A stretch of 64,000 bases of DNA from Hemiscyllium ocellatum (taxonomy: Eukaryota). The DNA lies in the NCBI RefSeq assembly GCF_020745735.1, contig NW_026867501.1, forward strand, positions 310,001 to 374,000, in the 5' to 3' direction. Position 1 is the first letter of the stretch; each line of letters starts with the position of its first letter. Positions 11,575-43,177 of the stretch are shown here, piece by piece. A model generated the notes under the pieces. The model worked only from the letters and a program-made list of their open reading frames with translations. It was not told where the DNA came from and did no database searches. A program made the translations under genes and the position numbers.

Positions 11575-12014
11575 GGGCTCAGTGCGCAGAAATACATCGC
11601 GAAGTCTGTCAGTTCTGCTGTCAACACTTTCAGCTGGATAGTGCGTTTCACATGATCAAACTCCGAGGAAAACCGGTCTTCTGGATGATTCTCTGTGTTC
11701 GTGATATATTGGTTTCTGTTTAGCAGATACTCCATGGAGCCGTTGGAATGCTGACGGTACCAGAACAGATAAGGATTGCTATTTGATGTAGCTGTGTAAT
11801 TACAGAATAACAGGACATCATCCGCCTCGTTCACTGTGACTGCGGCCGGTGATTGTGACACAGAATCTGCACGACAAACTCCTGTCATAAAATAGGAGTG
11901 AGAATAAATTTTAGAAGTTACTTCGTTACACTTATAGCATAGAATTAGCCCATTCACCTCGAACAATAAACAGAGGAATAAGAGACAGGGAAGATGAACA
12001 AGAATCCATTTCAT
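11575..12014 (-). CDS. Germline TCR alpha/delta-type V gene segment (V1), apparently intact: leader exon to 11958, 76-nt intron 11957-11882, V exon 11881-11575
   Basis: V domain GVCRADSVSQSP...LLFC...LFWYRQ...DRFS...LTDFAMYFCALSP has both Cys and the Trp, with no stops. GT-AG intron and a 23-RSS are present. The CALSP ending is typical of TCR Valpha/delta. The leader phase is ambiguous (see findings). Confidence 0.9.
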
Positions 12015-13499
12015 ACAACTCAGCCATTGCGACAGGCAAGGGCTTCAACAGATGTAATAAAACATCCTTGAAGGCATGGGCCACACCTTTTAAAGAGGTG
12101 AATTCCCATTTTAACTCCCGACATAAAAGGTAAAACTAAAATAAGTCGGTGAGTTTAAAAGTCCGGCCTTTGTCTATTCATCTCAACCTCAGTCCGGTCT
12201 GAAGTCCCAGCTTAACTCTTCCATGTTAGTTCACGCAGACGGGTTCGCTAATTTCTCCTAAACTGTGCTCAGTGTTGGTACAAGTATAGATCTAGATTTT
12301 TTCAATATCGGGACAATGTGTTGCTACTTCTGTGATGCTAGAATTGTTAGAGTACATATAATTCCCAACAAAGCGTTGAAGCATAAAGTTCCACAAGTTG
12401 TGCACCTACCAGTTAGAACAGCTGCAGCTGTGAGAAGTAAACACAGAGCTTTGGGCGACATTTTTTCAGAGATCACTATGAAAATGAACAAAACTGGCCG
12501 AAGCTAAAATTGTTCTCGTCAACAGTTGGGAAATGTTTCAGTTATTTCCGGATTGTTTCTCATTGGTTCATTGTTGGCAAAGATACCAGATGACAGCCAA
12601 TGGACTTCAAGTTCATTTATCCTTGAACCAAACACTTTCAATATCCTACGAACCCCACTTCACACCATGACTTTTGTAAGAAAGGAACAAAATTCTGAAA
12701 ATGGGTCAGTGGACTTGAAATTTTTGACGTTTTTTTTCTTCACAGATATTGTCAAAACTGCTGAGTTTCTCCGGATATTTTCGTTTCTGTCTCACGTTTC
12801 CAGCAAGTGCAATTATCTGCTTTTGGTTTAAATAACAAAGTGAATTTGATCAAGTGACAAAATGATAATATTTAAACGATATGTTGTTCTTTAAATTTTA
12901 TTATTTCTGTAGGCAAAACCAGTGATGGAAAGTACTTCATGTTGTTCCAGTATCAGAACTGGAGTTTCCCAGTGAACAGAGTACCTCGCTGACTGCGAGA
13001 GTTTTCCTGGAACTGATGCAAAGGGCCTGTGTGTCTAAGAAAACAGTCAGAAAAACAAATAAAGAAATAAATGAATGAACAAGTAAGATTTCAATAAATG
13101 TGAAAGTAGAAACGAATTTTTCTTCGACTGCAATTGCTGGTAAGTGCCATTAGGAGGCATAGGGACTCACTGGGTCGCAATGCTGCTTCCCTGCGCTCGA
13201 GATGCAAGTAAAATTTCACCTTCCTGCGACCACCTGCGTCGAGTTTGCACATTCTTACGATGCAGTGGGTGTTCTGATACTCGCCCACAGTTCAGTGATG
13301 TGCAGGCTAGGATGAATGACCGTGGGAAACTTGTGTTTACAGAAATAGAATGGATGTTTTCTGGAATGTAATTGCAATCTACATTCAATTAAACTGAATG
13401 GCCTGCTTCTAGATTCGCGGGATTCAATGGTATCAAAAACTGTCTTGCTTTAACTTAACCTTGCATCATTGCCAATGTACATCATGCATTTATATCAGA

Positions 13500-20092: not shown

Positions 20093-21539
20093 ATGCATGG
20101 CCCAGCGAGTGGCCCTTTCTATGCCATTTACTATCCAGCTCTTGCTGCTATTGGTGTCCCTGGTAAGTTACAGATTCCAAATATATGTTTGTTAGTTGAA
20201 AGAAAATCTTTTGTATTAAATTTCAGGAATGACATTTTTTTCTGATCTTCACGACTGAAGGAATTGAGCGCAAGTCCCTATACATGTGTCAAACATTGAG
20301 CTTTCCTCAATTGCGTCCTCTGCAGTACACCGCAACATTCTATCCAAAATGTAATATTGAACAATTATGGAGCAATTGGTTATTACATCATTGAGTTCGT
20401 TATTGTAATATGTAGCATTGCCTGCATATTAATCAGAATAACTGCACAAAATTAAATTCAGTTGTAATGCTGGAAATTACTGATGTATGGAATAATACGC
20501 TATCGTTGCGTTCGATATTCTCATGCACAGATTACATGATAATCCCGAAGAAAATCATTGCAGGTAGGTCATTATTTTAAAGATTATAAGTATATCTAGT
20601 GATTAATCAGGTCCGTTCAATAATACTTCGCAATTTCCCCCAGCCAACCTGCTGGCGATCGTCATACTATTGCGAGGACGGTGTGGACTCTCTGGGTGCA
20701 CCACCTATTACTTGGTGGGGATAGCAGTGAGTGATTTTCTTGTGATCATCACTGGGTGCATCCTGAATCGGATCGGTGGCATTTATTTCCGACACAGCAC
20801 ACTGTCCACGACCACTGCATGTGCAGTCAGCACCGTGATGATCTATACCAGCCGAGATGGCTCAGTCTGGCTGACCGTGGCATTCACCATCGACCGTTTC
20901 GTGGCCATATGCTGCCAGAATATGAAGACCAGGTACTGCACTGTGAAAACTGCATCACTGTTCATTGGAGTAGTTTGTGTCCTGAGCTGTATCAAAAACC
21001 TGCCTTCCTACTTCGTCTACCAGCCCTTGTACATTGTGGACGGGAGGTCCTGGTTCTGTGACTTCAGAGACACGTACTATAACTCACCTGCATGGAAATC
21101 CTATGACTGGCTGAATCACATCTTGACGCCTATTCTCCCGTTCCTTCTTATTCTACTGCTCAATGCCATGACTGTCAGGTACATCTTGGTAGCCAGCAGT
21201 GCCCGAAGGAGGCTTCGGGGATTGGCGAGCCACGGAGACTCAGAAATGGCCAACCGCAAGAGGTCCATCATACTGCTCTTCACTATCTCGCTCAGTTTCC
21301 TCCTTCTATGGGTCACCTATGTCGGGCGCTTCCTCTATGTGCGGGTTACAGGTGAGGCATATTTCAGCGGCTTAGATTTCACTGACCCACAGTTTATTCT
21401 CCAAGAAACGACGAACATGCTGCAAATATTAAGTTCCTGCAACAACGTCTTCATTTATGCAATATCCCAGAACAAATTCCGAGATGAACTGAAGAAAGTG
21501 ATGTTGTCTCCCTTCACAACTCTCGCTGTGTGCAAATAA
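20093..21539 (+). CDS. Intact two-exon class A GPCR, GPR139/GPR142-like, 321 aa (G4): exon 1 20093-20162, intron 20163-20643, exon 2 20644-21539
   Basis: Spliced protein MHGPASGPFYAIYYPALAAIGVP|ANLLAIVIL... with a GTAAGT donor, cccag acceptor and seven hydrophobic segments. Motifs: TM2 IAVSD, TM3 SVWLTVAFTIDRFVAIC, TM6 LLFTISLSFLLLW, TM7 NMLQILSSCNNVFIY. These parallel GPR139 motifs as I recall them (VYYSLLLCLGLPANIL, SIWITVPLTIDRYIAVC, NMLALLNTAINFFLY). Orthology not established. Confidence 0.92.
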
Positions 21540-22960: not shown

Positions 22961-23618
22961 AGCACGTTATTTTATTGTTATGGTACAGACAATAATATGA
23001 AATACCAATTAACGATTGTTCTGATATAATGTTTGAAAGTTCTATCCAGGAAGTGGACTTTGACAAAACACTTTTTTGTTTGCATATCTCGATGAGTTGG
23101 CAATTTACACGACTTTAATCTTTCCTGTGGTGTATCTATATGCTGCACAGTACAGTTTTTTCAACACTTAACACCGACAGGTCGGCGTTATTCTGGACCT
23201 GCAAATCGACAACGTGACATTTTGGAACTGTTATCATGAAGATGCAATGGCAGTACACAACAACCCACAATGTGGAGGTTGTTTCAGTGTCTCATTATTA
23301 GAATTTTGTGACAGGTCATTGTATCTCAAACAGGATACTACAGTTCCCTGTTTTGCCTGAAGATTTTGCTGGATCAAAACGAGTCCCTGAATTTTCTATC
23401 GCACGTCATTCCTAAAACAATAAAACGTTTTGGAACACCATGAAGGATGCAAAATAAATTAGTTGTTTTCTGTTCTCGAAATTGACGGCATTCCTTTCAA
23501 TAATAGATTTATACCAATTAAAGTGTTGTGTCCGAATGATAAGTATCAGCTATCACCTTGAACTCCGGAACCACATTAGATCCACTCCTGATCTCAATGT
23601 TTGCCTAGACGCTCCGAG

Positions 23619-23657
23619 AGTTTTTGTACACGGTCAGCCAAGTTCTGAGTCTCTGTG
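23619..23657 (-). other. 23-RSS of V2 (intact)
   Basis: CACAGAG (23657-23651), 23-nt spacer, ACAAAAACT (23627-23619). Confidence 0.95.
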
Positions 23658-24091
23658 GGACTCAGTGCGCAGTAATACACTGCAGTGTCTGTGAGTACTG
23701 TTTTCAAAACCTTCAGCTGCATAGTGCGGTTCACATGGTCAAAGTCCCAGGAGAGCTTGTCTGGTAGAAAACTCGTTTTCTGGCTATATTGGTTAATCTG
23801 CAGCAGAACATTCATGGACCCGTTGGAAGGTTAACGGTACCAGAACAGAGCAGGATTGCTGTTTATTGTAGAGTACTGACAGAACAACAGGGCATCATCA
23901 CCCTCGTTTACTGTGATTTCAGGCGGAGTTTGTGCGACAGAATCGCCATGACAAAGTCCTGTAAGAGCCAAGAATTAAAGAAATTTAATGAGGTACTTCA
24001 ACATTCTTATCTCATATACTCAGCCAGTTTACCTTCATCAACAACCCGAGAAAGAAAAAAATCAGGGAATTTGGACTGGGATCAATTTCAT
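23658..24091 (-). pseudogene. TCR V pseudogene (V2), paralogue of V1: leader 24091-24033, intron 24032-23959, V exon 23958-23658
   Basis: GLCHGDSVAQTPPEITVNEGDDALLFC...LFWYR*PSNG...TDTAVYYCALSP, with TAA at 23833-23831. The leader MKLIPVQIP* contains stops. Confidence 0.92.
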
Positions 24092-24678
24092 ATTAGGAGA
24101 TCATTCCCCATTTCATCTCCCACAACGTGAAAGGAAAACTGAAATATATTGGTGAATATAAAACACTCCGTTCTGTCGAATTATCTCAATGGCCTCGGTC
24201 CTGCCTGAATTTGCCGTCTAACTATTCCACTGCCATTCACTCACGTAAATTTGCTAATTTCTCTCGAAATCTGCTCATTGTTGGGGAAAGCTTAGATCTG
24301 AATAGTTTTATTTAGGAGAATGTATTCTTACTTCTGCATCACTCAAATTGATCGAGTAAACGTAAGTCCCAGCAAAGAGCTGACACACATAAGTAGACAA
24401 GCTTTCAACGTACCAGTGAGAAGACCTATAGTTCAGAGGAGTAAACAAAGAGCTCCAGGTAACATGTTTGCAGAGAATTTGCGATGAATGTGAGCAGAAC
24501 TGGCTGACGCTAAAATGGGTTTCATCAAGAGTAGGGTAATTGAGGTTGAGTAATTTCCGGATCTCTCCTCGTTGGATCATTGTTGCTCAAGGCATCACAT
24601 GATAGCCAATGAGCTACAGGCTCCCTTATTACTCAATTCCGCCATTCAGCTTCAAGCTCTTTTGAGCTCCACTTCATA

Positions 24679-27600
24679 TTATAGAACATAGAACATAGAA
24701 AGATACAGCGCAGTACAGGCCCTTCGGCCCTCGATGTTGCGCCGACCGAATCCTACCTAACCTACACGAGCCCAATAACTTCCAAATGCCTATCCAATGC
24801 CCGCTTAAATGACCATAAAGAAGGAGAGTTCACCACTGCTACTGGCAGGGCATTCCATGAACTCACAACCCGCTGTGTAAAGAATCTACCCCTAACATCT
24901 GTCCTATACCTACCACCCCTTAATTTAAAGCTGTGTCCCCTAGTAACACCTGACTCCATTAGCGGTAAAAGGTTCTCAGTGTCGACCCTATCTAAACCCC
25001 TAATCATCTTATACACCTCTATCAAATCTCCCCTAAACCTTCTCTTCTCCAATGAGAACAGCCCCAAGTGCCTCAGCCTTTCCTCATAAGATTTTCCTAC
25101 CATTCCAGGCAACATCCTGGTAAACCTCCTCTGCACTCGTTCCAATGCCTCCACATCCTTCCTATAGTATGGCGACCAAAACTGCACACAATACTCCAGA
25201 TGAGGCCGCACCAGAGTCTTATACAGTTGCAACATGACCTCAGGACTCCGGAACTCAATTCCTCTACCAATAAAGCCCAGTACACCATATGCCTTCCTCA
25301 CAGCACTATTTACCTGGGTGGCAACTTTCAGAGATCTGTGTACATGGACACCAAGATCCCTCTGCTCATCCACACTACCAAATAGCCTACCATTAGCCCA
25401 GTAATCCATCTTCTTGTTACTCCTACCAAAGTGAATGACTTCACACTTAGCTACATTGAATTCCATTTGCCACATTTCTGCCCAGCTCTGCAACTTATCT
25501 ATATCCCGCTGTAACCTACCACTTCCTTCCTCACTATCCACAACTCCACCGACTTTTGTGTCATCCGCAAACTTGCTTACCCAGCTTTCAAGCCCTTCCT
25601 CTAGATCATTTATAAAGATAACAAAAAGCAATGGTCCCAAAACAGATCCTTGTGGTACACCGCTAGTAACTGCACTCCAAGATGAACATAGTCCATCAAC
25701 TACTACCCTCTGTCTCCTTCCAGCCAGCCAATTCCTAATCCAAACCTCTAATGTATCCTCAATGCCATACCTCCGTAGTTTTAGCATTAGCCTACCATGG
25801 GGAACCTCATCGAACGCCTTACTAAAATCCATATACACAACATCTACTGCTTTACCCTCGTCCACTTCCTTAGTCACCTTCTCAAAGAACTCAATAAGGT
25901 TTGTGAGGCACGACCTGCCCTTCACAAAACCATGCTGGCTATCCTTGATCACGTTATTCCTATCCAGATGTTCATAAATCTTATCCCTTACCATTCTCTC
26001 TAAGACTTTGCCCACCACTGAAGTCAGACTCACTGGCCTATACTTACTAGGGCTATCCCTACTCCCTTTCTTGAACAAGGGGACCACATTCGCTATCCTC
26101 CAGTCCTCTGGTACTATTCCCGTTGACAATGACGATATAAAAATCCAGGTCAATGGCTCTGCTATCTCCTCCCTAGCTTCCCATAGGATCCTAAGGTAAA
26201 TGCCATCAGGCCCAGGAGACTTATCTATTTTCATCCTCTCCAATATTCCCAGAACCTCTTCCCTGCATATTTCCAGGCCATCCATTCTAATCATTTGTGA
26301 CTCCATATTCACATCAGCAACAGTGTCCTGTTCCTGAGTGAATACTGATGAAAAGTATTGATTTAGTGTCTCTCCAATCTCCTCCGCCTCCACACACAAC
26401 TTCCCACTACTATCCTTGACTGGACCGATACCTACCCTAGTCATCCTTTTATTCCTGACATACCTATAGAAAGCCTTTGGGTTTTCCCTAATCCTACCAG
26501 CTAAAGACTTTTCATGTCCCCTTCTCGCTTCTCTTAGCTCTCTCTTTACATCCTTCCTGGCTACCTTATAACTCTCTATCGCCCCAACCGAACCTTCACG
26601 CCTCATCTTTACATATGCCGCCTTCTTCCCTTTCGCAAGGGATTCCAATTCCTTACTAAACCACGGCTGCCTCACAAGGCCCTTTACACCATGCCTGACT
26701 GGTACATATTTATCGAGGACACGTAGTAGCTGCTCCTTGAACAATCCCCACATCTCATTAGTGTTCTTCTCTTGAAGCCTGTTTTTCCAGTCCACACATC
26801 CTAAGTCATGCCTCACTGCCTCATAATGTCCCTGCCCCCAGCTATAACTCTTGCCCTGCGGCGCACACTTATCCCTCTCCATCACTAAAGTAAAAGTCAC
26901 CGAGTTGTGGTCACTGTCACTGAAGTGCTCACCTACCTCCAAGTCTAACACCTGGCCTGGTTCATTACCTAGAACCAAGTCCAGTATAGCCTCACCTCTT
27001 GTTGGCCTGTCTACATATTGTGTCAGGAAACCCTCCTGCACACATTGGACAAACACCGACCCATCTAATGAACTCGAGCTATAGCTCTCCCAGTCAATAT
27101 CTGGGAAGTTAAAGTCCCCCATAACAACCACCCGACTACCTTCACTCTTTTCCTGAATCATCCTCGCAATATTATCCTCTACTTCTCTAGGACTATTAGG
27201 AGGCCTGTAGAAAACACCTAACAGGGTGACCTCACCTTTCCTATTTCTAACCTCAGCCCAAACTACCTCAGATTGCAAGTCCTCTTCCATCGTCCATTCC
27301 ACTGCTGTAATACTATCTTTGACAAGTAATGCCACACCTCCCCCTTTTTTACCCCCATGTCTGATCCTACTAAAACATTTAAACCCTGGAACCTGCAACA
27401 GCCATTCTTGTCCCTGTTCTACCCACGTCTCTGTAATGGCCACAACATCGAAGTCCCAGGTACTAACCCACGCTGCAAGTTCACCTACCTTATTTCTTAT
27501 ACTTCTGGCATTGAAGTATACACACTTCAATCCACCCTTCTGTTTACAGGCACCCTCCTTTGAGATCGCTGCATTATTCATAACCTCCCTACACTCAAGG

Positions 27601-28531
27601 TCCTGTACCCTAAAGCTACAGTCCAGGTTCCCATGCCCCGGCGGAGTTAGTTTAAACCCTCCCAAAGAGCACTAGCAAACCTCCCCCCAAGGATACTGGT
27701 GCCCCTCAGGTTCAGGTGTAGACCATCCTTTTTATAGAGGTCCCACCTTCCCCAGAAAGAACCCCAGTTGTCCAGAAACCGGAATCCCTCCCTCCTGCAC
27801 CATCCCTGTAGCCACGCATTTAACTGCTGTCTCTCCCTATTCCTCGACTCTCTATCACGTGGCACGGGTAACAAACCAGAGACTACAACTCTGTTTGTTC
27901 TAACTCTGAGCTTCCAACCTAGCTCCCTGAAAGCCTGTCTGACATCCTCACCCCTCTTCCTACCTATATCGTTGGTGCCAACGTGGACCACGATCTGGGG
28001 CTGATCCCCCTCCCCCTTAAGGACCCGGAAAACACGATCAGCGACATCACGTAACCTTGCACCTGGGAGGCAACATACCAAACGTAAGTCACTTTCGCCC
28101 CCACAAAACCGTCTGTCTGTACCTCTCACTATCGAGTCCCCAAGAACTATCGCTCTACCTTTCACCACCCTTCCCTTCTGAGCAACGGGGCCAGGCTCCG
28201 TGCCAGAGGCCTGAACCTCGTTGCTTGCCCCTGGTAAGTCATCCCCCCCACAAGTATCCAAAACGGTATACTTGTTCTTGAGGGGAATGACCGCAGGGGG
28301 TCCCTGCACTGGCTTCCTCCTCCCACTCCCCCTCACTGTCACCCATCTATCTTGAACTTTCGGAGTAACTACTTCCCTAAAGCTCTGATCTATGACCCTC
28401 TCTGCCTCCCGAATGATCCGCAGTTCAACCAAATCCAGCTCCAGTTCCCTAACACGGGCTTGGAGGAGCTGGAGATGGGTGCACTTCTTGCAAGTGTACT
28501 CAGCAGGGACGCTAATGGCTTCCCTTCCCTC
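24679..28531 (-). mobile_element. Young CR1-clade LINE, 5'-truncated in ORF1 (left arm of palindrome)
   Basis: ORF1 remnant (CKKC, coiled coil, SGNH esterase), uninterrupted ORF2, 3' UTR and (TTCTATG)n tail ending at ~24679. Confidence 0.97.
24762..27665 (-). CDS. CR1 ORF2: APE endonuclease plus reverse transcriptase, uninterrupted 967 codons
   Basis: Endonuclease motifs FNARS, ITETW, MGDFN, SDHN. RT motifs QHGF, MDFSKAFD, PQGSVLGP, FADD. Confidence 0.95.
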   Translation of the reverse strand: MGGFKLTPPGHGNLDCSFRVQDLECREVMNNAAISKEGACKQKGGLKCVYFNARSIRNKVGELAAWVSTWDFDVVAITETWVEQGQEWLLQVPGFKCFSRIRHGGKKGGGVALLVKDSITAVEWTMEEDLQSEVVWAEVRNRKGEVTLLGVFYRPPNSPREVEDNIARMIQEKSEGSRVVVMGDFNFPDIDWESYSSSSLDGSVFVQCVQEGFLTQYVDRPTRGEAILDLVLGNEPGQVLDLEVGEHFSDSDHNSVTFTLVMERDKCAPQGKSYSWGQGHYEAVRHDLGCVDWKNRLQEKNTNEMWGLFKEQLLRVLDKYVPVRHGVKGLVRQPWFSKELESLAKGKKAAYVKMRREGSVGAIESYKVARKDVKRELREARRGHEKSLAGRIRENPKAFYRYVRNKRMTRVGIGPVKDSSGKLCVEAEEIGETLNQYFSSVFTQEQDTVADVNMESQMIRMDGLEICREEVLGILERMKIDKSPGPDGIYLRILWEAREEIAEPLTWIFISSLSTGIVPEDWRIANVVPLFKKGSRDSPSKYRPVSLTSVVGKVLERMVRDKIYEHLDRNNVIKDSQHGFVKGRSCLTNLIEFFEKVTKEVDEGKAVDVVYMDFSKAFDEVPHGRLMLKLRRYGIEDTLEVWIRNWLAGRRQRVVVDGLCSSWSAVTSGVPQGSVLGPLLFVIFINDLEEGLESWVSKFADDTKVGGVVDSEEGSGRLQRDIDKLQSWAEMWQMEFNVAKCEVIHFGRSNKKMDYWANGRLFGSVDEQRDLGVHVHRSLKVATQVNSAVRKAYGVLGFIGRGIEFRSPEVMLQLYKTLVRPHLEYCVQFWSPYYRKDVEALERVQRRFTRMLPGMVGKSYEERLRHLGLFSLEKRRFRGDLIEVYKMIRGLDRVDTENLLPLMESGVTRGHSFKLRGGRYRTDVRGRFFTQRVVSSWNALPVAVVNSPSLWSFKRALDRHLEVIGLV

Positions 28532-28576
28532 GCCATTAGCGTCCCTGCTGAGTACACTTGCAAGAAGTGCACCCAT
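27647..28576 (-). CDS. CR1 ORF1 (truncated Zn motif, coiled coil, SGNH/GDSL esterase), open from an ATG supplied by the opposite arm; 309 aa
   Basis: GDSIVRG, VGTND and DGLH esterase blocks are intact. The in-frame ATG at 28576 lies in the antisense strand of the right arm. Confidence 0.75.
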   Translation of the reverse strand: MGALLASVLSRDANGEGREAISVPAEYTCKKCTHLQLLQARVRELELDLVELRIIREAERVIDQSFREVVTPKVQDRWVTVRGSGRRKPVQGPPAVIPLKNKYTVLDTCGGDDLPGASNEVQASGTEPGPVAQKGRVVKGRAIVLGDSIVRGTDRRFCGGESDLRLVCCLPGARLRDVADRVFRVLKGEGDQPQIVVHVGTNDIGRKRGEDVRQAFRELGWKLRVRTNRVVVSGLLPVPRDRESRNRERQQLNAWLQGWCRREGFRFLDNWGSFWGRWDLYKKDGLHLNLRGTSILGGRFASALWEGLN

Positions 28577-31500
28577 CTCCAGCTCCTCCAAGCCCGTGTT
28601 AGGGAACTGGAGCTGGATTTGGATGAACTGCGGATCATTCGGGAGGCAGAGAGGGTCATAGATCAGAGCTTTAGGGAAGTAGTTACTCCGAAAGTTCAAG
28701 ATAGATGGGTGACAGTGAGGGGGAGTGGGAGGAGGAAGCCAGTGCAGGGACCCCCTGCGGTCATTCCCCTCAAGAACAAGTATACCGTTTTGGATACTTG
28801 TGGGGGGGATGACTAACCAGGGGCAAGCAACGAGGTTCAGGCCTCTGGCACGGAGCCTGGCCCCGTTGCTCAGAGGGAAGGGTGGTGAAAGGTAGAGCGA
28901 TAGTTCTTGGGGACTCGATAGTGAGGGGTACAGACAGACGGTTTTGTGGGGGCGAAAGTGACTCACGTTTGGTATGTTGCCTCCCAGGTGCAAGGTTACG
29001 TGATGTCGCTGATCGTGTTTTCCGGGTCCTTAAGGGGGAGGGGGATCAGCCCCAGATCGTGGTCCACGTTGGCACCAACGATATAGGTAGGAAGAGGGGT
29101 GAGGATGTCAGACAGGCTTTCAGGGAGCTAGGTTGGAAGCTCAGAGTTAGAACAAACAGAGTTGTAGTCTCTGGTTTGTTACCCGTGCCACGTGATAGAG
29201 AGTCGAGGAATAGGGAGAGACAGCAGTTAAATGCGTGGCTACAGGGATGGTGCAGGAGGGAGGGATTCCGGTTTCTGGACAACTGGGGTTCTTTCTGGGG
29301 AAGGTGGGACCTCTATAAAAAGGATGGTCTACACCTGAACCTGAGGGGCACCAGTATCCTTGGGGGGAGGTTTGCTAGTGCTCTTTGGGAGGGTTTAAAC
29401 TAACTCCGCCGGGGCATGGGAACCTGGACTGTAGCTTTAGGGTACAGGACCTTGAGTGTAGGGAGGTTATGAATATTGCAGCGATCTCAAAGGAGGGTGC
29501 CTGTAAACAGAAGGGTGGATTGACGTGTGTATACTTCAATGCCAGAAGTATAAGAAATAAGGTAGGTGAACTTGCAGCGTGGGTTGGTACCTGGGACTTC
29601 GATGTTGTGGCCATTACAGAGACGTGGGTAGAACAGGGACAAGAATGGCTGTTGCAGGTTCCAGGGTTTAAATGTTTTAGTAGGATCAGACATGGGGGTA
29701 AAAAAGGGGGAGGTGTGGCATTACTTGTCAAAGATAGTATTACAGCAGTGGAATGGACGATGGAAGAGGACTTGCCATCTGAGGTAGTTTGGGCTGAGGT
29801 TAGAAATAGGAAAGGTGAGGTCACCCTGTTAGGTGTTTTCTACAGGTCTCCTAATAGTCCTAGAGAAGTAGAGGATAATATTGCGAGGATGATTCAGAAA
29901 AAGAGTGAAGGTAGTCGGGTGGTTGTTATGGGGGACTTTAACTTCCCAGATATTGACTGGGAGAGCTATAGCTCGAGTTCATTAGATGGGTCGGTGTTTG
30001 TCCAATGTGTGCAGGAGGGTGTCCTGACACAATATGTAGACAGGCCAACAAGAGGTGAGGCTATACTGGACTTGGTTCTAGGTAATGAACCAGGCCAGGT
30101 GTTAGACTTGGAGGTAGGTGAGCACTTCGGTGACAGTGACCACAACTCGGTGACTTTTACTTTAGTGATGGAGAGGGATAAGTGTGCGCCGCAGGGCAAG
30201 AGTTATAGCTGGGGGTAGGGAAATTATGAGGCAGTGAGGCATGACTTAGGATGTGTGGACTGGAAAAACAGGCTTCAAGAGAAGAACACTAATGAGATGT
30301 GGGGATTGTTCAAGGAGCAGCTACTACGCGTCCTCGATAAATATGTACCAGTCAGGCATGGTGTAAAGGGCCTTGTGAGGCAGCCGTGGTTTAGTAAGGA
30401 ATTGGAATCCCTTGCGAAAGGGAAGAAGGCGGCATATGTAAAGATGAGGCGTGAAGGTTCGGTTGGGGCGATAGAGAGTTATAAGGTAGCCAGGAAGGAT
30501 GTAATGAGAGAGCTAAGAGAAGCGAGAAGGGGACATGAAAAGTCTTTAGCTGGTAGGATTAGGGAAAACCCAAAGGCTTTCTATAGGTATGTCAGGAATA
30601 AAAGGATGACTGGGGTCGGTATCGGTCCAGTCAAGGATAGTAGTGGGAAGTTGTGTGTGGAGGCGGAGGAGATTGGAGAGACACTAAATCAATACTTTTC
30701 ATCAGTATTCACTCAGGAACAGGACACTGTTGCTGATGTGAATATGGAGTCACAAATGATTAGAATGGATGGCCTGGAAATATGCAGGGAAGAGGTTCTG
30801 GGAATATTGGAGAGGATGAAAATAGATAAGTCTCCTGGGCCTGATGGCATTTACCTTAGGATCCTATGGGAAGCTAGGGAGGAGATAGCAGAGCCATTGA
30901 CCTGGATTTTTATATTGTCATTGTCAACGGGATTAGTACCAGAGGACTGGAGGATAGCGAATGTGGTCCCCTTGTTCAAGAAAGGGAGTAGGGATAGCCC
31001 TAGTAAGTATAGGCCAGTGAGTCTGACTTCAGAGGTGGGCAAAGTCTTAGAGAGAATGGTAAGGGATAAGATTTATGAACATCTGGATAGGAATAACGTG
31101 ATCAAGGATAGCCAGCATGGTTTTGTGAAGGGCAGGTCGTGCCTCACAAACCTTATTGAGTTCTTTGAGAAGGTGACTAAGGAAGTGGACGAGGGTAAAG
31201 CAGTAGATGTTGTGTATATGGATTTTAGTAAGGCGTTCGATAAGGTTCCCCATGGTAGGCTAATGCTAAAACTACGGAGGTATGGCATTGAGGATACATT
31301 AGAGGTTTGGATTAGGAATTGGCTGGCTGGAAGGAGACAGAGGGTAGTAGTTGATGGACTATGTTCATCTTGGAGTGCAGTTACTAGCGGTGTACCACAA
31401 GGATCTGTTTTGGGACCATTGCTTTTTGTTATCTTTATAAATGATCTAGAGGAAGGGCTTGAAAGCTGGGTAAGCAAGTTTGCGGATGACACAAAAGTCG

Positions 31501-32371
31501 GTGGAGTTGTGGATAGTGAGGAAGGAAGTGGTAGGTTACAGCTGGATATAGATAAGTTGCAGAGCTGGGCAGAAATGTGGCAAATGGAATTCAATGTAGC
31601 TAAGTGTGAAGTCATTCACTTTGGTAGGAGTAACAAGAAGATGGATTACTGGGCTAATGGTAGGCTATTAGGTAGTGTGGATGAGCAGAGGGATCTTGGT
31701 GTCCATGTACACAGATCTCTGAAAGTTGCCACCCAGGTAAATAGTGCTGTGAGGAAGGCATATGGTGTACTGGGCTTTATTGGTAGAGGAATTGAGTTCC
31801 GGAGTCCTGAGGTCATGTTGCAACTGTATAAGACTCTGGTGCGGCCTCATCTGGAGTATTGTGTGCAGTTTTGGTCGCCATACTATAGGAAGGATGTGGA
31901 GGCATTGGAACGAGTGCAGAGGAGGTTTACCAGGATGTTGCCTGGAATGGTAGGAAAATCTTATGAGGAAAGGCTGAGGCACTTGGGGCTGTTCTCATTG
32001 GAGAAGAGAAGGTTTAGGGGAGATTTGATAGAGGTGTATAAGAAGATTAGGGGTTTAGATAGGGTCGACACTGAGAACCTTTTACTGCTAATGGAGTCAG
32101 GTGTTACGAGGGGACACAGCTTTAAATTAAGGGGTGGTAGGAACTTGACAGATGTTAGGGGTAGATTCTTTACACAGCGGGTTGTGAGTTCATGGAATGC
32201 CCTGCCAGTAGCAGTGGTGAACTCTCCTTCTTTATGGTCATTTAAGCGGGCATTGGATAGGCATTTGGAAGTTATTGGGCTAGTGTAGATTAGCTAGGAT
32301 TCGGTCGGCGCAACATCGAGGGCCGAAGGGCCTGTACTGCGCTGTAGCTTTCTATGTTCTATGTTCTATAA
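28532..32371 (+). mobile_element. Young CR1 LINE (right arm of palindrome), disabled
   Basis: Near-identical inverted copy of the left arm. ORF1 has a TAA at 28814-28816 and a 1-nt deletion near 28875; ORF2 has a TAG at 30216-30218. The (TTCTATG)n tail ends at ~32371. Confidence 0.97.
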
Positions 32372-33120
32372 AAGGTAGGTGAGTTCTGAAACTACCATTT
32401 TGTGCTGGTATTTACGATAGAGAAGGAACTAGTGGAGTCTGAATTTACAATTCAAGTTACTATTAAAAAGGAAGACATGTTGTGTGCCTTAAAAATATCA
32501 TTAAGTTAGATAGGTCCTCAGGTTCTCATCGGATCTAAGCCAGAAACTTGAGGGAGGCAAATAAGCAAATTGTTGAAGCATTGACAGACATTTTTATATC
32601 ATGTTGGCTATAGGTGAAGTCCCAGAGTAGTGCAGAACGTTTAATGTTGTCCCGTTGTTTAAGAAGAGTAGCAGGGATAATCCAGGAAATTACAGGCCTG
32701 TGAACCTCAGGTCAGTGGCACGGACATTATTGGAAAACATTCTCAGGGAGAAGATCTGTACGTATTCAGAGGCAATTGGACTTGTTAGTGATGCACAGCA
32801 CGGTTTTGTGCAGGGACGATTTAGCCCCACTAACTTGTTTGAGTTATTTGAGGAGGAAATTAAGATGACTGATGAAAGAAATGTGTTGATGTTGTCGACA
32901 GGGACGTAAGTAAAATATTTCACTCACACGCTCATGACAGACTGGTGTCAAACGTTGAAGTCACACGGCATCAGAATGAGCTGGAAGATGGTCACAGAAC
33001 TGGCTTAGTAATAGGAGACAGATGGTAGTAGTGGAAGGCTGTTTTTCTGAATGGAGGTTTGTGACTAGTGATGCTCCACATGGATCATTGCAGGGACCTT
33101 TGCTGATCGTGGTCTACATA

Positions 33121-35120
33121 TATAGAACATAGAACATTACAGCGCATACAGGCCCTTCGGCCCTGGATGTTGCGCCGCCCTGTCATACTAATCTGAAGCC
33201 CATCCCAACTACACTATTCCATGTACGTCCACTTGCCTGGCCAATGATGATTTAAATGCACTTAAACCTGGCGAATCTATTACCGATGCAGGCAAAGCAT
33301 CCCATACCCTTACTACTCTTTGCGTAAAGAAACTACCTCTGACAATTGTCTTATACCTATCTTCCCTTACTTTAAAGTTGTGTCCCCTCGTTTTTGCTGT
33401 CCCCATACGTGGAAAAAGGCTCTCCCTCTCCACCCTATCTAATCTTTGATTATCTTGTGTGTTTCTATTAAGTCACCTCTCAACCTTCTTCTCTCTAACG
33501 AGGACAGCCTCAAGGCCCTCAGCCTTTCCTCGTAAGACATTCCTTCCATGCCAGGCAACATCCTAGTAAATCTCCTCTGTACCCTTTCCAAAACTTCCAC
33601 ATCCTTCTTATAATGCGGTGACCAGAACTGTACACAATACTCCAAGTGTGGCCGTACCAGAGCTTTGTAGAGCTGCAGCATAACCTCCTGGTTCCGGAAC
33701 TCAGTCCCTCTATTAATAAAGGCTAAAACATTGTATGCCTTCTTAACAACCCTGTCAATCTGGGTGGCAACTTTCAGGGATCTGTGTATATGGATACCGT
33801 GATCTCTTTGCTCATCTGCACTCCCAAGAATCTTACCATTAGCCCAGTACTTTGCATTCTGATTACTCCAGCCCAAGTGTATCACCTCACATCTGTCCAC
33901 ATTAAACTCCATTTGCCAACTCTCAGCCCATCTCTGCATCCTATGTATGTTTCTCTGCAACCTACTACATCCTTTGTCATTATCCACAACTCCACCGACC
34001 TTAGTGTCGTCCGCAAATGTACTATCCCACCCTTCTAAGCCCTCATCCAGGTCATTTATAAAAATGACGAGCAGCATTGGACCCAACACCGATCCTTGCG
34101 GTACTCCGCTAGTAACTGGACACTAAGATGAACAAGTTTCATCAACTACACACTCTGTTTTCTTTCAGCAAGCCAATTACAGATCCAAACTGCTATGTCA
34201 CCCACAATCTCATTACTCCGCACTGTGTATAAGAGCCTCCTGTGGGGAAGCTTGTCGAATGCCTTGCTGAAATCCATATGCAACACATCAACCGGTTTAC
34301 ACTCATTTATCTGTTTGGTCACTTTGTCAAAAAACTCAATAACATTCGTTAGGCACGACCTACCCTTCACAAAACCGTGCTGACTGTCCCTGAACCGATT
34401 ATTCTTTCTGGATGGTTGTCAATCCTGTCTCTTATAAACTTTTTCACCACTTTACCAACAACTGAAGTGAGACTCACTCGTCTTTAATTACCAGGGCGGT
34501 CTCTACCACCTTTTTTGAACAAGGGAACCACATTTTCTATCCACCAATCCTCAGGCACTATTCCTGTAGAAAATGATGATTTGAAGATCAATGCCAAAGA
34601 CTCGGCAATCTCTTTCCTTGCATCCCAGAGGATCCTATAATCGATCCTAGGCGGCACGGTGGCACAGTGGTTAGCACTGCTGTCTCACAGCGCCTGAGAC
34701 CCGGATTCAATTGCCGACTCAGGCGACTGACTGTGTGGAGTTTGCACGTTCTCCCCGTGTCTGCGTGGGTTTCCTCCGGGTGCTCCGGTTTCCTCCCACA
34801 GTCCAAAGATGTGCGGGTCAGGTGAATTGGCCATGCTAAAATGCCCGTAGTGTTAGGTAAGGGGTAAATGCAGGGGTATGGGTGTGTAGCGCTTCGGCGG
34901 GTCGGTGTGGACTTGTTGGGCCAAAGGGCCTGTTTCCACACTGTAAGTAAACTAATCTAATCTAATCATCCCAACCAGCCCAGGGGACTTGTCTATTTTC
35001 ACACTCTGCATTATTTCTAATAACTCTTCCTTGTGAACCTCAATCTCTTCTACTCTAGATGTAAGTATCTCTGTATCTTCCTCATCAACATTTTCATTTT
35101 CTATAGTGAAAATGTTTGCG
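33121..35120 (-). mobile_element. 5'-truncated CR1 LINE nested in the older CR1 and itself interrupted by a SINE
   Basis: tagaacatagaac tail at 33121; ORF 33439-34089 includes STFADDTKVGG. Confidence 0.9.
34650..34967 (+). mobile_element. Full-length tRNA-derived HE1-type SINE
   Basis: A-box TGGCACAGTGG, B-box-like GGATTCAATTG, a CR1-like 3' end (gggccaaagggcctgt...ctgta) and a (TAATC)n tail. Confidence 0.9.
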
Positions 35121-36509: not shown

Positions 36510-36840
36510 TTAGAACATAGAACGTAGAACATACAACAGTACAGCAGAGTATAGGCCATTCGGCCCACCATTTTGTACTGACCTTTCATCCTTCTCTAAG
36601 ATTTAACTGAGCTACACACACGCAATTTTACCATCAGTTATGTTCTGATTCATGAGTAGCTTGAATGCCCCTAACGTATATGACTCGACAACCACTGCTT
36701 GCAATGCATTCGACGCACCCACCACTCTCTGTGCAAAGAACCTACCTCTGACATGTCCCCTAAGCGTTCCTCCAATTATCTTAAAATTTGCACCATCGTA
36801 ATAGCCATTTCCTCTCTGGAAAATATATTTGGCTATCCAC
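36510..36840 (-). mobile_element. CR1 3' end fragment
   Basis: tagaacatagaacgtagaac tail plus antisense ORF2 end (WNAL..). Confidence 0.8.
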
Positions 36841-38789: not shown

Positions 38790-39775
38790 CGATGTTCACT
38801 AACCTGTAAAACGTGTGCTTGAATGCGGAAGTGGAAAGCTGGATGAGTAAATTTGCCGATGATAAGAAGGGATGTGGAATGGTAGAGAGTTTGGAGGAAT
38901 GTTGCAAGTTGCAAGGGGACATTGAAAGCATGCAGAACTTGGCTGAGAAGTGGCAGATGGAGTTCAACCTTGGAAAATATCAAGAAATTCACTTTGCAAG
39001 TTTGAATTTGAATGCAGAATACAGGGTCAAGGCAGCATTCTTGGCAATATCGAGGAACAGAGAGATCTTGGAGTCCATGTCCACAGATCCTTCAAAGCTG
39101 CCACCCAAGTCAAAAGGGTCGTGAAACAGCTATATTGTGTTTTGGCTTTCATGAGTAAGGGGATTGAGTTGAAGGGCCGCGAGGTTATGCTGCAGCTCTA
39201 TAGAGCCATGGTCAGATCACACTTGGAATATTGCGCTCAGTGATGGTTCACTCATGATAGAAAGTATGGGGAAGCCTTAGAGGTAGTGCAGAAGAAGCTT
39301 ACAAGGATGCTTCCTGGTCTGGAGGACATTTCGTATGAAGCAAATTTGAGAGAGCGAGGGCTTTTCTCAATGGAGCAAAGAAGGATGAGAGATGACTTGA
39401 TAGACGTGAAGAAGAGGATGAGTATAATAGATACAATGAATAGTCAGAGACGTTTTCCCATGGTGGAAGTAGCTATCATGTGTGGGCATAATTTTATGTT
39501 GAATGGAGGAAAGTTTAGACAAGATTTCAGGGGGTAGATTCTTTACACAGAGAGTCGATGGTGCGTGGAATGCACTGCCAACAGTGGTAGTAGAATTAGA
39601 AACTTCACCGAAATTTTACCGACTCCTGGATAGGGACATCGAAGATAGTACAATGAGGGATATGTCGATTAGTCTGGTCAATGAGTAGAATAAACGTTCG
39701 GCACAATATCGAGGGCCCAATGGCCTGTATTGTGTTGCACTGTTCTGTTCTCGATGTTCGACGTTCAATGTTCTA
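38790..39775 (+). mobile_element. CR1 3' fragment
   Basis: SKFADDKK, RDLGVHVHRS, RSHLEYC and a ttctg/ttcga tail. Confidence 0.88.
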
Positions 39776-39964
39776 AATCGTACTTTATATCTTCCCAAAG
39801 TTGTCACTCACAATGTCCAGCTATTTATTTTACTAGACTAGATACTACATCACCTACGCCTATAGAGAGCTGTGCCATTAATTACAGTTAACTTCACTTT
39901 GTCATTTCTCTCAGATTTGCTGGAATTACGTTACACCCTGTCTCTGTTCAAAATAAGTTAGAGT

Positions 39965-42185
39965 TTGGACTGGATAACGAACCCGGCCAGGTGTTAGGTT
40001 TGGAGGTAAGTTAGCACTTTGGTGATAGTCACCATAATTCATTTATGTTGATTTTAGTGATGGAAAGGAATAGGTATGTAACGCAGGGCAAGAGTTATAG
40101 CTGGGGGAAAGATGCAATTAAGCAAGATTTATGATGCATAATGATGGGCACAATTAAAATGTGGAGCATATACAAGTTCCAGCTGCTGTGGGCCCTTCAT
40201 AAGCATGTACCGATCAGGCAGGAACAAAGTTTTTGAGCGCAGGACCGGGGTTGATTGAGGAAGTTGAATCTATTTTCAAGAGGAGGAAGAAGGCTTATGT
40301 TATAATAAGCTGTGATGGCTCAATTGGGGCGCTTGAGAGTTACACGTTAGCCAGGAAATACCTAAAGAGAGAGCTAAGAAGAGTCAGGAGTGGACATGAT
40401 AAGTCATTGGCGAACAGGATGAAGGAAAACCCTCAGGCTTTCTACAGATATATCAGAAATAAAAGAATGATTAGAGGAAGATTACGGCCAATCAAGCATA
40501 GTGGTGGGAAGTTGGAAGTGGTGCCAGAGGAAATAGGTGAATACTGTTCTTTGGTATTCACTTTAGAAAAAGATAACGTCCTCAGGGAGTACACTGAGAT
40601 AAAAGCTACTAGACCAGATAGGACTGAGGCGCACAAGGAGGAGGTGTTAGCATTTCTGGAAAGTGTAAAAATATATAAGTCCCCTGTGCTGGATGGAATT
40701 TATCCTAGAATTCTCTGCGAAGCCAGGGAGGAGATTGCTCAGCATTTGGCTTTGATCTTTATGTCACCATGATCTACAGGAACAGTGCCAGAAGATGGAA
40801 GGATAGCAAATGTTGTTCCCTTCCTAAAGAAGGCAAGTAGAGACAACCCTGGGTATTTTGCACCTGTCAGCCTTATTTCGGTTGTAGGTAAAGTGTTGGA
40901 AAGGGTTGTAAGAGGTAAGATTTATAATCATCTAGAGATGAATAAGTTATGGATAGTCCACGCGGTTTTGTGAAGGTTAGGTCGTGCCACACAAACTTTA
41001 TTGAGATTTTTGAGATGGTGACCAACAGGTGGGTGAGGGTCAAGCGGTTGATGTGCTGAATATAGATTTAAATAAGGCAATTAATAAGGTTCCCCACAGT
41101 AGACTAGTGCGCAATGTATAGATGCATGAGATTGAGGGTGATTTAGACGTTTGGATCAGATATTAGCTCACTGAAAGAAGACAGAGATGGTTGGTGGCAA
41201 ATGTTCATCCTTGAGTTCAGTTACAAGAGGGAGACTGCAAGGATCTGTTGAGCATCCGCTGTTGTTTGTCATTAATATAAATGACCTGGAACAAGGCATC
41301 GAAGTTTGGGTTAGTCAATTTGCGATTGACACTAATGTCTGTAGAGTTGTGGATCGTGATGAAGGATGTTGGAGAGACGTGGATAAGCTGCAAAACTGGG
41401 CTTACAGGCGGCAAATGGAGTTTAATGCGGAAAGGTGTGAGGTGATTCACTTTGAAAGGAGTAACAATAATGCAGAGGACTGTGCTCATGGTCAGTTTCT
41501 TGGATATTTCAGTGTCCAGGTACACAGATCCCTGAAAGTTGCCACCCAGCATGATAGGGCTGTTAAGAAGGCAAACGGTTGGTTAACTTTTATTGGTAGA
41601 GGGATTGAGTTTCCGAAGCATGAAGTCATGCTGTAGCTGGACAAAACACTGGTGCAACATTTTGAGTGTTGCGTACAGTTCTAGTCACCACACTATAGAG
41701 AGGATGTGAAAGCTTTGGAAATGGCTCAGAGGATATTTACTGGGATATTGCCTGTTATGGAGGGAAGGTCTTATGAGGAAACGCTGAGGTGCCTGTAGCT
41801 GTTTTCGTTGGAGAGAAGAAGGTTGAGACAACTTAATTGAGACATATAAAATAATCCGAGGGTTAGATAATTTGGACAGTGAGAGTCGTTTTATCTCGGA
41901 TGGCGATGGCTAGCACGATTCGATATAGCTTTAAATTGAAAGAAGATAGATACAGGACAGATGTCAGAGTTAGCTTCTTTACTCAGAGATTAGCAGGGGG
42001 CGTATAACGCATCCCATGCAACAGTTCTGGATTCGCAACCTTTCAGGGCATTTAAGTAGTCATTGGATAGGCATATGGAACCAAATTGGATCTGGAAGGT
42101 TAGATGAACATCAGATTGGTTCCACCGGTTGGCGCAACATTGAGTGCTGAAGGGCTGGTGCTTAACTGTCACGTTTTATGTTCTG
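39965..42185 (+). mobile_element. Degenerate ~2.2 kb CR1 ORF2 fragment
   Basis: ENPQAFYRYIRNKR, KSPVLDGIYPRIL, WRIANVV-like and later RT motifs, with many lesions. Confidence 0.88.
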
Positions 42186-43177
42186 TGTCACTAATGTATG
42201 AAATTATCCTCTATCTTAATTATTGTTTCTTGGAACAGTGTCAATGGCGTTATGCAATCACGTTATTTACTGGATTTGACCTTGTTTTAGTTCATACTGC
42301 AACTTTACGTGTCTTAATTGCTACTGCAAATTTATATATCTCTTTCAAAGTTACACTACGTCTGTCCCAGTGAACACTTCAATCAGGTTCATCCCAATTG
42401 TTCCTGCAGACACTGTGGAATTTCTGCATTACACTGACCGAGTCTGCTTTGTTGATGAACCTGGCAACATATTTTAAAACAGCTTCCAGTCACTCGTTTA
42501 TCTGATATTTCTGTCCTTATATTAAACATTGACATTGATCAACTGTTCCTGAACAAGCAACTGTGATCAGGAGCATCAGCACTTAAACGGCCTTTCGGCA
42601 TTCTGATTGTTCAGATTAAATTAAGGATTTTTCAGATTCAGTGGGTGGGAGAAGATTTGCATTTGATAACCACTACCACATTAACGTCCCATGCTTGCTA
42701 ACTTCCCATGCTTGTTTCCCAAAGGTTCAAACGCAAATTTATGAAAATGGTAAAATACCAGTCACTAAAAGATATATGAATGAACGCAAATGAAAATCTA
42801 GGACAACGCTTTAAATGATTAATCAACTGGGGAATAGCAGAAGTCAAAGTAGAAAGAAAGTTCAGATGCAGGAGCTCAGCTCAATGTCCACCATTGGCGG
42901 ATCTACCTGATGCAGACACAACATCATGATTTGTGGACCTGGACGAAACAAAGCAATTCCAACGACCCTGTCCCAACCTCAAATACAATTATTCACCTTG
43001 TTTAAAGACATGAAGCAGAGAGTTAATCTCTTTGTGTAGCGAACTGTAAGTAAGGTGCATGCTGTTATTTAATTGTCACTCTCGAGACAATCACTTAGAA
43101 TATATGAGAGCCCACTTGAATGTGTCACAGAACCAACATCCACAGCAACAGCCAACTGCTACCGTTTCTGAGCGAAG

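What the first reader, a model, noticed from the sequence alone, without database searches (positions are those of the whole stretch)
24679..32371. 7.7 kb palindrome of two head-to-head CR1 copies, confined exactly to the LINE, with a 12-nt loop
Seen: arms of 3841 and 3840 nt. Both run to the end of the (TTCTATG)n tail, and unique DNA starts immediately beyond on each side (..cttcatat|TATA..TATA|aaaggtag, consistent with a self-complementary TATA target). The two 5' truncation points differ by only 12 nt. The spacer is native left-arm ORF1 sequence (E-G-R-E). Inference: a genomic fold-back would duplicate flanking DNA, ordinary twin priming inverts without duplicating, and two independent insertions would not truncate 12 nt apart. 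The best fit is a single event in which first-strand cDNA snapped back, self-primed a copy to the tail and was joined to the other target end. Long palindromes with tiny spacers are normally unstable (cruciforms, hairpin cleavage), so persistence in a RAG/Artemis-active locus is notable. Read-through transcription would give a ~3.8 kb dsRNA against an active family.
Basis: partly seen in the sequence, partly recalled or inferred. Interest (0 to 1): 0.8.

Follow-up and report, generated by a model that had tools for sequence, protein, structure and literature searches.

The report
Shark CR1 retrotransposon inserted as hairpin-shaped double copy
One jumping-gene insertion in a shark T-cell-receptor V-gene region consists of two mirror-image 3.8-kb copies joined head to head. 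It most likely arose when the new DNA copy folded back and copied itself during insertion, an accident known from engineered elements but rarely seen whole in nature.

Summary
Window 24679-32371 is a 7.7-kb inverted repeat with arms 24679-28519 and 28532-32371 and a 12-nt spacer. The arms differ by 35 substitutions and 1 indel (99.1% identity). Each arm is a 5'-truncated CR1-type LINE (esterase ORF1, APE+RT ORF2, (TTCTATG)n tail), with the tails outward and non-duplicated flanks.

A related full-length ORF1 contig shows the spacer is native ORF1 sequence in left-arm sense (10/12 nt). So the left arm is the RNA-templated copy, 12 nt longer than the right.

The arm differences look like neutral decay: 22 nonsynonymous to 4 synonymous, about 11 left-derived to 18 right-derived, evenly spread. 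That argues against a fold-back read artefact.

Best reading (about 0.6): one retrotransposition in which the first-strand cDNA snapped back, copied itself to the tail and was joined to the far target side. The main rival is priming from both target ends. No reads, second assembly or empty site could be checked.

Snap-back junctions are published for engineered R2, and this scan noted a smaller CR1 case in the same genome (s1-147025). This is therefore a new natural member of a known kind. What stands out is its size, its flush ends and its apparent long survival with a 12-nt spacer.

The parts
24679..28519 (-). Left arm: 5'-truncated CR1 copy, sense on the minus strand, tail at the left flank. 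Inferred to be the RNA-templated first-strand cDNA arm.
   Evidence: arm limits; domains; continues into the spacer as native ORF1 sequence.
28520..28531 (-). 12-nt spacer or loop. Native ORF1 codons 15-18 (E-G-R-E) in left-arm sense. No internal base pairing is possible.
   Evidence: sequence; 10/12 nt identical to L001 ORF1; homologues read EVRE; unpaired loop in the fold.
28532..32371 (+). Right arm: inverted copy, sense on the plus strand, starting at ORF1 codon 19 and ending in the tail at the right flank. Inferred to be the DNA-templated snap-back copy.
24680..24700 (-). Left 3' tail: (TTCTATG)x2 plus TTCTATA, read on the minus strand.
   Evidence: The same tail type occurs on older CR1 copies at 33122 and 36511.
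32350..32370 (+). Right 3' tail, identical in length and sequence to the left tail.
24762..27665 (-). Left-arm ORF2, open for 967 aa, with APE endonuclease and reverse transcriptase.
27647..28531 (-). Left-arm ORF1 (GDSL/SGNH esterase type). It lacks only about 14 N-terminal codons and the 5' UTR. The frame is open and runs on through the centre into antisense right-arm sequence.
28532..29403 (+). Right-arm ORF1, broken by a stop at 28814-28816 and a 1-nt deletion near 28873.
29385..32288 (+). Right-arm ORF2, broken by one stop at 30216-30218 (Q278 to stop).
24659..24678 (.). Left target flank. Partly complementary (11/20) to the right flank 32372-32391. Not a copied flank.
   Evidence: p about 0.013 by resampling.
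32372..32391 (.). Right target flank (see left flank).

Best explanation
This is a single CR1 retrotransposition event that ended in a snap-back.

Inferred steps:
1. The top strand was nicked at an AT-rich site (...CATAT/TATA/AAAGG...). Its 3' end primed reverse transcription on the RNA tail.
2. First-strand cDNA was made for about 3.85 kb, up to ORF1 codon 15. This is the left arm plus the spacer.
3. The cDNA 3' end then left the RNA, folded back 12 nt and used the cDNA itself as template. The sense strand was copied all the way back to the tail. This is the right arm.
4. The returning 3' end, which finishes in the self-complementary TATA, was joined to the other side of the target. This happened either by ligation back into the original nick, leaving a hairpin on one strand that the next replication fixed as a palindrome, or by annealing and end joining to the second-strand break followed by fill-in.

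Shown: the structure, the native spacer, the identical tails, the unique flanks, and the neutral 0.9% divergence between arms.

Inferred: the order of events, the enzyme that made the second arm, and how the far end was joined.

Since insertion the two arms have decayed independently. The right arm has lost both reading frames; the left has not.
For: The palindrome stops exactly at both tails and the flanks are not inverted copies.

The two truncation points abut and differ by 12 nt. Those 12 nt are native ORF1 sequence of the left arm only, which is what a small hairpin loop at a cDNA 3' end would leave.

The tails have identical length on both arms, while other CR1 copies in the window have different tail lengths.

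The arm differences behave as neutral, roughly symmetric decay:
- 22 nonsynonymous to 4 synonymous in ORF2, against a neutral expectation of 0.78 nonsynonymous.
- About 11 left-derived to 18 right-derived, p=0.26.
- Uniform spread along the arm, KS p=0.35.

Snap-back 5' junctions, where the cDNA 3' end primes synthesis on the cDNA before the upstream junction forms, are documented for R2-driven insertions in human cells (PMC11371274; PMC11331408).

Against: There is no read-level or second-assembly support. Look-ups of the centre-spanning and arm ORFs found nothing.

The present sequence shows no base pairing that could have held the folded-back 3' end. Microhomology at 28531|28532 is 0 nt if the native upstream codon is as in L001, and at most 2 nt (GC) if it is as in some homologues.

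Why synthesis stopped flush with the tail is not explained by data. The other case in this genome is reported to run on into the flank.

The flanks are weakly complementary to each other (11/20, p about 0.013), which would suit a symmetric two-ended priming model.

The 0.9% arm divergence would mean millions of generations of survival at the pedigree rate published for the epaulette shark, which I take only as the nearest species with a measured rate (PMC10587355). That is surprising for a palindrome with a 12-nt spacer.
Confidence: 0.6

Rival explanations
1. This is one event with two cDNAs (symmetric twin priming). Both strands of a quasi-palindromic TATA target were nicked. Each 3' end (...TATA) primed on the tail of a CR1 RNA. 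The two cDNAs were then linked at their 3' ends by an end-to-end template jump or by end joining.
For: Both junctions read primer-TATA-GAACATAG, so either strand of a single TATA could pair with the RNA end. The flanks are weakly complementary around that TATA (11/20, p about 0.013). The centre junction is blunt, with 0-2 nt of homology, as in template jumps or end joining.
Against: Two independent cDNAs would have to stop within 12 nt of each other along about 3.85 kb. That is roughly 0.6% if stops are uniform. No ribozyme or other sign of a discrete RNA 5' end is found at that point, and the point lies inside ORF1 codon 15-19. Identical tail lengths are not required by this model.
Confidence: 0.15
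2. This is an assembly or sequencing artefact, for example a fold-back chimeric long read or a mis-join, and only one CR1 copy exists in the animal.
For: No independent read or assembly evidence could be obtained. Palindromes are hard to sequence. If the genome is the CLR-based epaulette shark assembly, polishing in repeats can add errors.
Against: A fold-back read mirrors everything up to the molecule end, flank included. Here the symmetry stops exactly at the element's tail on both sides, and different unique DNA follows. The arms differ at 36 evenly spread sites, whereas the two strands of one molecule would give identical arms. An asymmetric native 12-nt spacer is not expected from a strand-switch artefact.
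Confidence: 0.08
3. This is a DNA-level rearrangement after an ordinary insertion, such as replication template switching or hairpin-capped break repair, that duplicated the LINE in inverted orientation.
For: Inverted duplications with small hairpins and 0-2 bp of microhomology are known at L1-induced breaks (bioRxiv 10.1101/2024.12.14.628481).
Against: Such events duplicate genomic DNA without regard to element borders. Here the outer breakpoint would have to coincide to the base with the end of the 3' tail. No flank is duplicated.
Confidence: 0.06
4. The structure comes from two independent CR1 insertions, or from retrotransposition of a transcript of an already palindromic parent locus.
For: CR1 debris is dense here, so repeated hits in the region do occur.
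Against: A second insertion would have to land exactly at the 5' end of the first, be truncated within 12 nt of the same position and have the same tail length. A palindromic transcript would have to begin exactly at the complement of the tail and be copied through a 3.8-kb RNA hairpin.
Confidence: 0.02

Closest known systems
Snap-back 5' junctions of target-primed reverse transcription (R2-based PRINT insertions in human cells; PMC11371274, PMC11331408)
   Same: [quoted passage not shown] This gives antisense element sequence fused to the target on the far side.
   Different: Those are engineered R2 templates at rDNA in cultured cells, read as short junction reads. Here it is a natural germline CR1 at a non-specific site. 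The self-copy ran the full 3.84 kb and ended flush with the tail, so the product is a complete palindrome confined to the element.
Twin priming of L1 (5' inversions)
   Same: One retrotransposition event gives two oppositely oriented segments of the element. It involves the second target end.
   Different: Twin priming inverts the 5' part and duplicates at most a few bases, and the two segments together make one element. Here every base from codon 19 to the tail is present twice.
Head-to-head inverted copies of Penelope-like elements
   Same: Two 5'-truncated copies are joined head to head with tails outward. The arrangement is attributed to self-priming.
   Different: PLEs carry a GIY-YIG endonuclease and hammerhead ribozymes, and they make such structures routinely. 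This element has an APE endonuclease, an esterase ORF1, a microsatellite tail and no ribozyme hit. For CR1 this is an exception, not the rule.
L1-associated inverted duplications and fold-back junctions in cancers and L1-expressing cells (bioRxiv 10.1101/2024.12.14.628481)
   Same: Self-annealing of a 3' end with a small hairpin and 0-2 bp of homology primes synthesis at a TPRT-generated end.
   Different: There the duplicated DNA is genomic flank, or the whole chromosome arm is mirrored. Here no flank is duplicated.
Hairpin-primed second-strand synthesis in classical cDNA cloning (established laboratory knowledge, not searched here)
   Same: Reverse transcriptase products fold back at their 3' end and self-prime a full second strand, leaving a small loop.
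   Different: That is an in vitro reaction, and the loop is cut away. Here the loop survives in the genome as the 12-nt spacer.

Membership tests
CR1-clade LINE | ORF2 with an N-terminal APE-type endonuclease and a reverse transcriptase | tested here: met
   Pfam Exo_endo_phos 2.4e-19 and RVT_1 6.5e-35 in the 967-aa left ORF2.
CR1-clade LINE | ORF1 of the esterase (SGNH/GDSL) type found in CR1/L2-group elements | tested here: met
   Lipase_GDSL_2 6.6e-13. There are 106 homologues, mostly from sharks and rays, 300-315 aa long.
CR1-clade LINE | 3' end made of a short microsatellite-like repeat instead of poly(A) | tested here: met
   (TTCTATG)n on both arms and on older copies at 33122 and 36511. 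Seven matches against 0.2 expected.
CR1-clade LINE | Phylogenetic placement of the RT within the CR1 clade rather than L2 or Rex1 | tested here: inconclusive
   The best non-shark ORF2 matches are bird and turtle reverse transcriptases at 50-56% identity, which fits CR1. No tree was built.
Snap-back TPRT insertion | Reverse-complemented element sequence fused directly to the 5'-truncated end of the element | tested here: met
   The right arm begins 12 nt from the left arm's end.
Snap-back TPRT insertion | The sequence between the two copies belongs to the RNA-templated copy (hairpin loop) | tested here: met
   The spacer is 10/12 identical to native ORF1 in left-arm sense only.
Snap-back TPRT insertion | Both copies derive from one cDNA molecule | not testable with these tools
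   The identical tails and neutral, roughly symmetric divergence are consistent with this but do not prove it.
Twin-priming inversion | Inverted and direct segments are non-overlapping parts of one element (no large duplication) | tested here: not met
   The arms overlap over 3840 nt.
Penelope-like element head-to-head insertion | GIY-YIG endonuclease and hammerhead ribozyme in the repeat | tested here: not met
   The endonuclease is APE type. There is no Rfam hit at gathering threshold in the window, and only sub-threshold generic hairpin matches at the centre.
Genomic fold-back or inverted duplication | Flanking genomic DNA is mirrored together with the insert | tested here: not met
   Flank complementarity is 11/20, then 33/100, which is random.

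The most novel reading that the evidence does not exclude
The palindrome was made without any second-strand break. The snap-back strand returned to the original nick and was ligated there, so a 7.7-kb hairpin sat on one strand until replication fixed it. This predicts an empty site that is exactly left flank plus right flank, with no duplication or loss. If the 0.9% arm divergence is real age, a near-perfect 3.8-kb-arm palindrome with a 12-nt spacer has then survived millions of shark generations. That would mean either unusual germline tolerance of long palindromes or protection by the asymmetric loop. CR1 snap-back would then be a recurrent natural source of long palindromes in this genome.
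Probability: 0.2. Interest if true: 0.7.

Novelty: new member of a known kind. Interest (0 to 1): 0.45.

Why it matters
How LINE insertions are completed is still the least understood part of retrotransposition: second-strand synthesis, 5' junction formation, and which polymerase does what. A natural product in which the first strand served as template for the whole second copy is a frozen intermediate of that step. Its loop, its blunt centre junction and its flush outer end each constrain the mechanism.

It also shows that LINEs can create kilobase palindromes in one step. In yeast, quasi-palindromes with 12-bp spacers raise gross rearrangement rates more than 10,000-fold (PMC8053094). A copy that has accumulated about 1% arm divergence is therefore a useful test case for palindrome tolerance in a vertebrate germline.

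If transcribed, it would give a long hairpin RNA against the CR1 family. That remains speculation.

Tried and rejected
**An apparent excess of changes on the right arm.** Distant ORF2 proteins alone suggested the right arm carried about four times more derived changes (4:16), hinting at an error-prone copying step. The closer outgroup L001 and the older copies in the window brought this to about 11:18, which is not significant. I dropped the idea.

**The transversion-rich spectrum.** The arms show 14 transitions to 21 transversions, 10 of them A/T transversions, which looked abnormal. The same family gives 50:44 against L001. The difference is not significant (Fisher p=0.24 and p=0.12).

**Independent support for the centre.** Exact-protein look-ups of the two centre-spanning ORFs and of both ORF2 versions found nothing on record. 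The one close relative, P0126 from Hemiscyllium ocellatum (96% over 71% of the C-terminal query), could not be fetched as DNA because its gene range is too long.

**An empty-site proxy from a paralogue.** The left flank 24107-24629 is paralogous to the region upstream of the other V gene (12105-12620). The homology ends 49 nt before the insertion, so it gives no proxy.

**A discrete RNA 5' end at the truncation point.** There is no Rfam match at gathering threshold. Near the centre there are only sub-threshold microRNA-precursor models matching the hairpin.

**The GPCR ORF 3 kb to the left as a handle for orthologous loci.** It has no proper start and is probably a pseudogene, so I did not pursue it.

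**Literature.** I found no paper describing a natural LINE-confined full palindrome. Absence from this library is not proof of absence.


Full report
**1. The observation**

The repeat finder reports two contiguous inverted pairs (24664-28176/28874-32386 and 28169-28519/28532-32882), split only by a 1-nt indel. A global alignment of the two halves and blastn define arms 24679-28519 and 28532-32371, separated by 12 nt (28520-28531, ttcccttccctc). The arms differ by 35 substitutions and one 1-nt indel, which is 99.06% identity.

Both arms end in the same tail: two TTCTATG units, then TTCTATA, plus one more complementary T/A pair at 24679/32371. Outside that, complementarity falls to 11 of the first 20 positions and 33 of 100. 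The symmetry is therefore confined to the element. A 172-nt piece around the centre folds into a perfect 80-bp stem with the 12 nt as loop.

**2. What the element is**

Each arm carries two reading frames.
- ORF1 is of the GDSL/SGNH esterase type.
- ORF2 has an APE-type endonuclease and a reverse transcriptase.

ORF1 homologues are almost all from sharks and rays and are 300-315 aa long. Beyond sharks, the ORF2 C-terminal half matches bird and turtle reverse transcriptases best, at 50-56% identity. The 7-nt tail repeat recurs on older copies in the window at 33122 and 36511. This is a CR1-type LINE, not a Penelope-like element: there is no GIY-YIG domain and no ribozyme hit.

The only close relative in the protein collections is a partial protein of Hemiscyllium ocellatum (96% over 71% of the C-terminal query). 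Earlier notes of this scan call the genome a shark.

**3. Where the arms stop**

I aligned the ORF1 fragment with full-length homologues and the DNA with a Logan contig that carries a complete ORF1 plus 131 nt of leader (L001, 93% nt identity).
- The left arm plus spacer begins at ORF1 codon 15.
- The right arm begins at codon 19.
- Both therefore lack the 5' UTR and the first 14-18 codons.

In left-arm sense the 12 spacer bases match the native sequence at 10 of 12 positions (E-G-R-E against E-V-R-E). In right-arm sense they do not. So one arm is simply 12 nt longer, and the 'spacer' is its own 5' end. Past it, each arm runs straight into the antisense of the other, with no homology to native upstream sequence.

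The junction 28531|28532 has no microhomology if the upstream codon is as in L001. It has up to 2 nt (GC) if the codon is TGC, as in one homologue. The 12 nt cannot pair among themselves.

**4. The differences between the arms**

The ratio is 14 transitions to 21 transversions. It looks odd, but it does not differ significantly from the 50:44 seen between this family and L001.

In ORF2, 22 of 26 differing codons are nonsynonymous. The neutral expectation is 0.78, so there is no selection between the arms.

I polarised the changes with L001, the older copies in the window and ORF2 homologues. This gives about 11 changes on the left arm and about 18 on the right (p=0.26). An earlier 4:16 impression from distant proteins alone did not survive the closer outgroup.

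The sites are evenly spread (KS p=0.35). One cluster of four changes lies within 5 nt (24904-24908/32142-32146).

The right arm has a stop and a frameshift in ORF1 and one stop in ORF2. The left arm is open throughout. With about 4.5% of random changes giving stops, that is within chance.

These features fit two copies that were identical at birth and then decayed independently. They do not fit the two strands of one sequenced molecule.

**5. Mechanism**

Four observations have to be explained together:
- complete duplication in inverted orientation;
- truncation points that abut and differ by a short stretch native to one arm;
- identical tails;
- no duplication of the flank.

The alternatives fail as follows.
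- Ordinary twin priming does not duplicate.
- Genomic fold-backs and L1-associated inverted duplications mirror the flank.
- Two separate insertions would need an absurd coincidence.
- A later DNA rearrangement would need a breakpoint exactly at the end of the tail.

A snap-back of the first-strand cDNA explains all four. The loop is the last 12 nt made on RNA. The second arm is a copy of the first, tail included. Synthesis runs out where the cDNA meets the target. This junction class is documented for R2-driven insertions in human cells, including junctions of antisense transgene to upstream target DNA (PMC11371274; PMC11331408).

The tail ends in TATA, which is self-complementary. The returning 3' end could therefore pair with the opposite target end. 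Alternatively, if the second strand was never cut, it could be ligated back into the nick, leaving a one-strand hairpin that the next replication fixes. That last step is my inference and makes a clear prediction for the empty site.

**6. The main rival**

The main rival is priming from both strands of a quasi-symmetric TATA target. Both junctions read primer-TATA-GAACATAG, and the flanks are weakly complementary (p about 0.013). The blunt centre would suit a template jump or end joining.

But two independent cDNAs ending 12 nt apart along 3.85 kb has a chance of roughly 0.6%, unless the RNA had a fixed 5' end there. I found no sign of one. I give snap-back 0.6, two-ended priming 0.15, artefact 0.08, later rearrangement 0.06 and the rest 0.02. 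The remainder stays unassigned.

**7. Artefact question**

I could not see reads. Look-ups of exact ORF products spanning the centre or the arms found no record elsewhere. The internal evidence is against an artefact: the symmetry ends at the element border on both sides with different unique flanks, there are 36 evenly spread arm differences, and the loop is asymmetric and native. If the genome is the CLR-based epaulette shark assembly, some substitutions could be polishing errors in repeats. That would make the palindrome younger, not unreal.

**8. Age and persistence**

Arm divergence is 0.0092 after correction. At the pedigree rate of 7e-10 per site per generation published for the epaulette shark (PMC10587355), this is about 6.5 million generations, with a range of 3-33 million from the rate's confidence interval. 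This holds if that species' rate applies and all differences are real mutations.

In yeast, inverted repeats, including ones with 12-bp spacers, raise gross rearrangements more than 10,000-fold. Loops over 8 nt do escape one nuclease pathway (PMC8053094). Long survival is therefore notable.

The locus is indeed a TCR-like V cluster: there is a V with a 23-RSS at 11520-12014, and a second V exon at 23612-23965 about 715 nt from the left tail. But those enzymes act in lymphocytes, not in the germline.

**9. Novelty**

The mechanism class is published for engineered R2. This scan has already noted a smaller CR1 palindrome with a copied flank in the same genome (s1-147025; not verified by me). I found no paper describing a natural, complete, element-confined LINE palindrome.

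I file it as a new natural member of a known kind. It is interesting for its completeness (3.84 kb self-copy), its flush ends and its apparent age.

Noticed in passing
window 11520-12014 (-) and 23612-23965 (-); weaker matches at 56072-56200 (+) and 1070-1195 (+): TCR-like V gene segments. The first has a leader, a V-set domain ending in YFCALS, and a 23-spacer recombination signal (CACAGAG, 23 nt, ACAAAAACT). The second is 61% identical at protein level. A conserved upstream block (12105-12620 and 24107-24629, 69%) ends 49 nt before the palindrome.
   Followed up: partly
window 20670-21539 (+), 44671-45108 (+), 62639-63244 (+): Rhodopsin-family GPCR reading frames (Pfam 7tm_1) interspersed with the V segments. 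The first lacks a proper start and a normal first helix, so they are probably pseudogenes.
   Followed up: partly
window 32579-33104 (+), 33122-34637 (-), 36511-36583 (-), 38834-42188 (+): Older CR1 fragments, 66-74% identical to the arms, crowd the DNA to the right of the palindrome. The 33122 copy has the same tail type ending in TTCTATA.
   Followed up: partly
window 24659-24678 and 32372-32391: The two target flanks are complementary at 11 of 20 positions (p about 0.013). This is too weak for a copied flank. It may be chance, a quasi-palindromic target, or microhomology used in joining.
   Followed up: partly
window 24904-24908 / 32142-32146: Four differences within 5 nt between the arms, with the right arm derived. 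This is a single multi-nucleotide event or a polishing error.
   Followed up: no
window 27647-27665 (-) and 29385-29403 (+): ORF1 and ORF2 overlap by 19 nt in different frames, and ORF2 has no ATG near its start. Another note on this window proposes a -1 frameshift here (s1-210525). I did not examine it.
   Followed up: no
window 28475-28576: Because the spacer is a multiple of three, reading frames on both strands run from antisense sequence of one arm, through the centre, into ORF1 of the other arm. An ATG lies 14 codons before the spacer. This is a by-product of the symmetry.
   Followed up: partly
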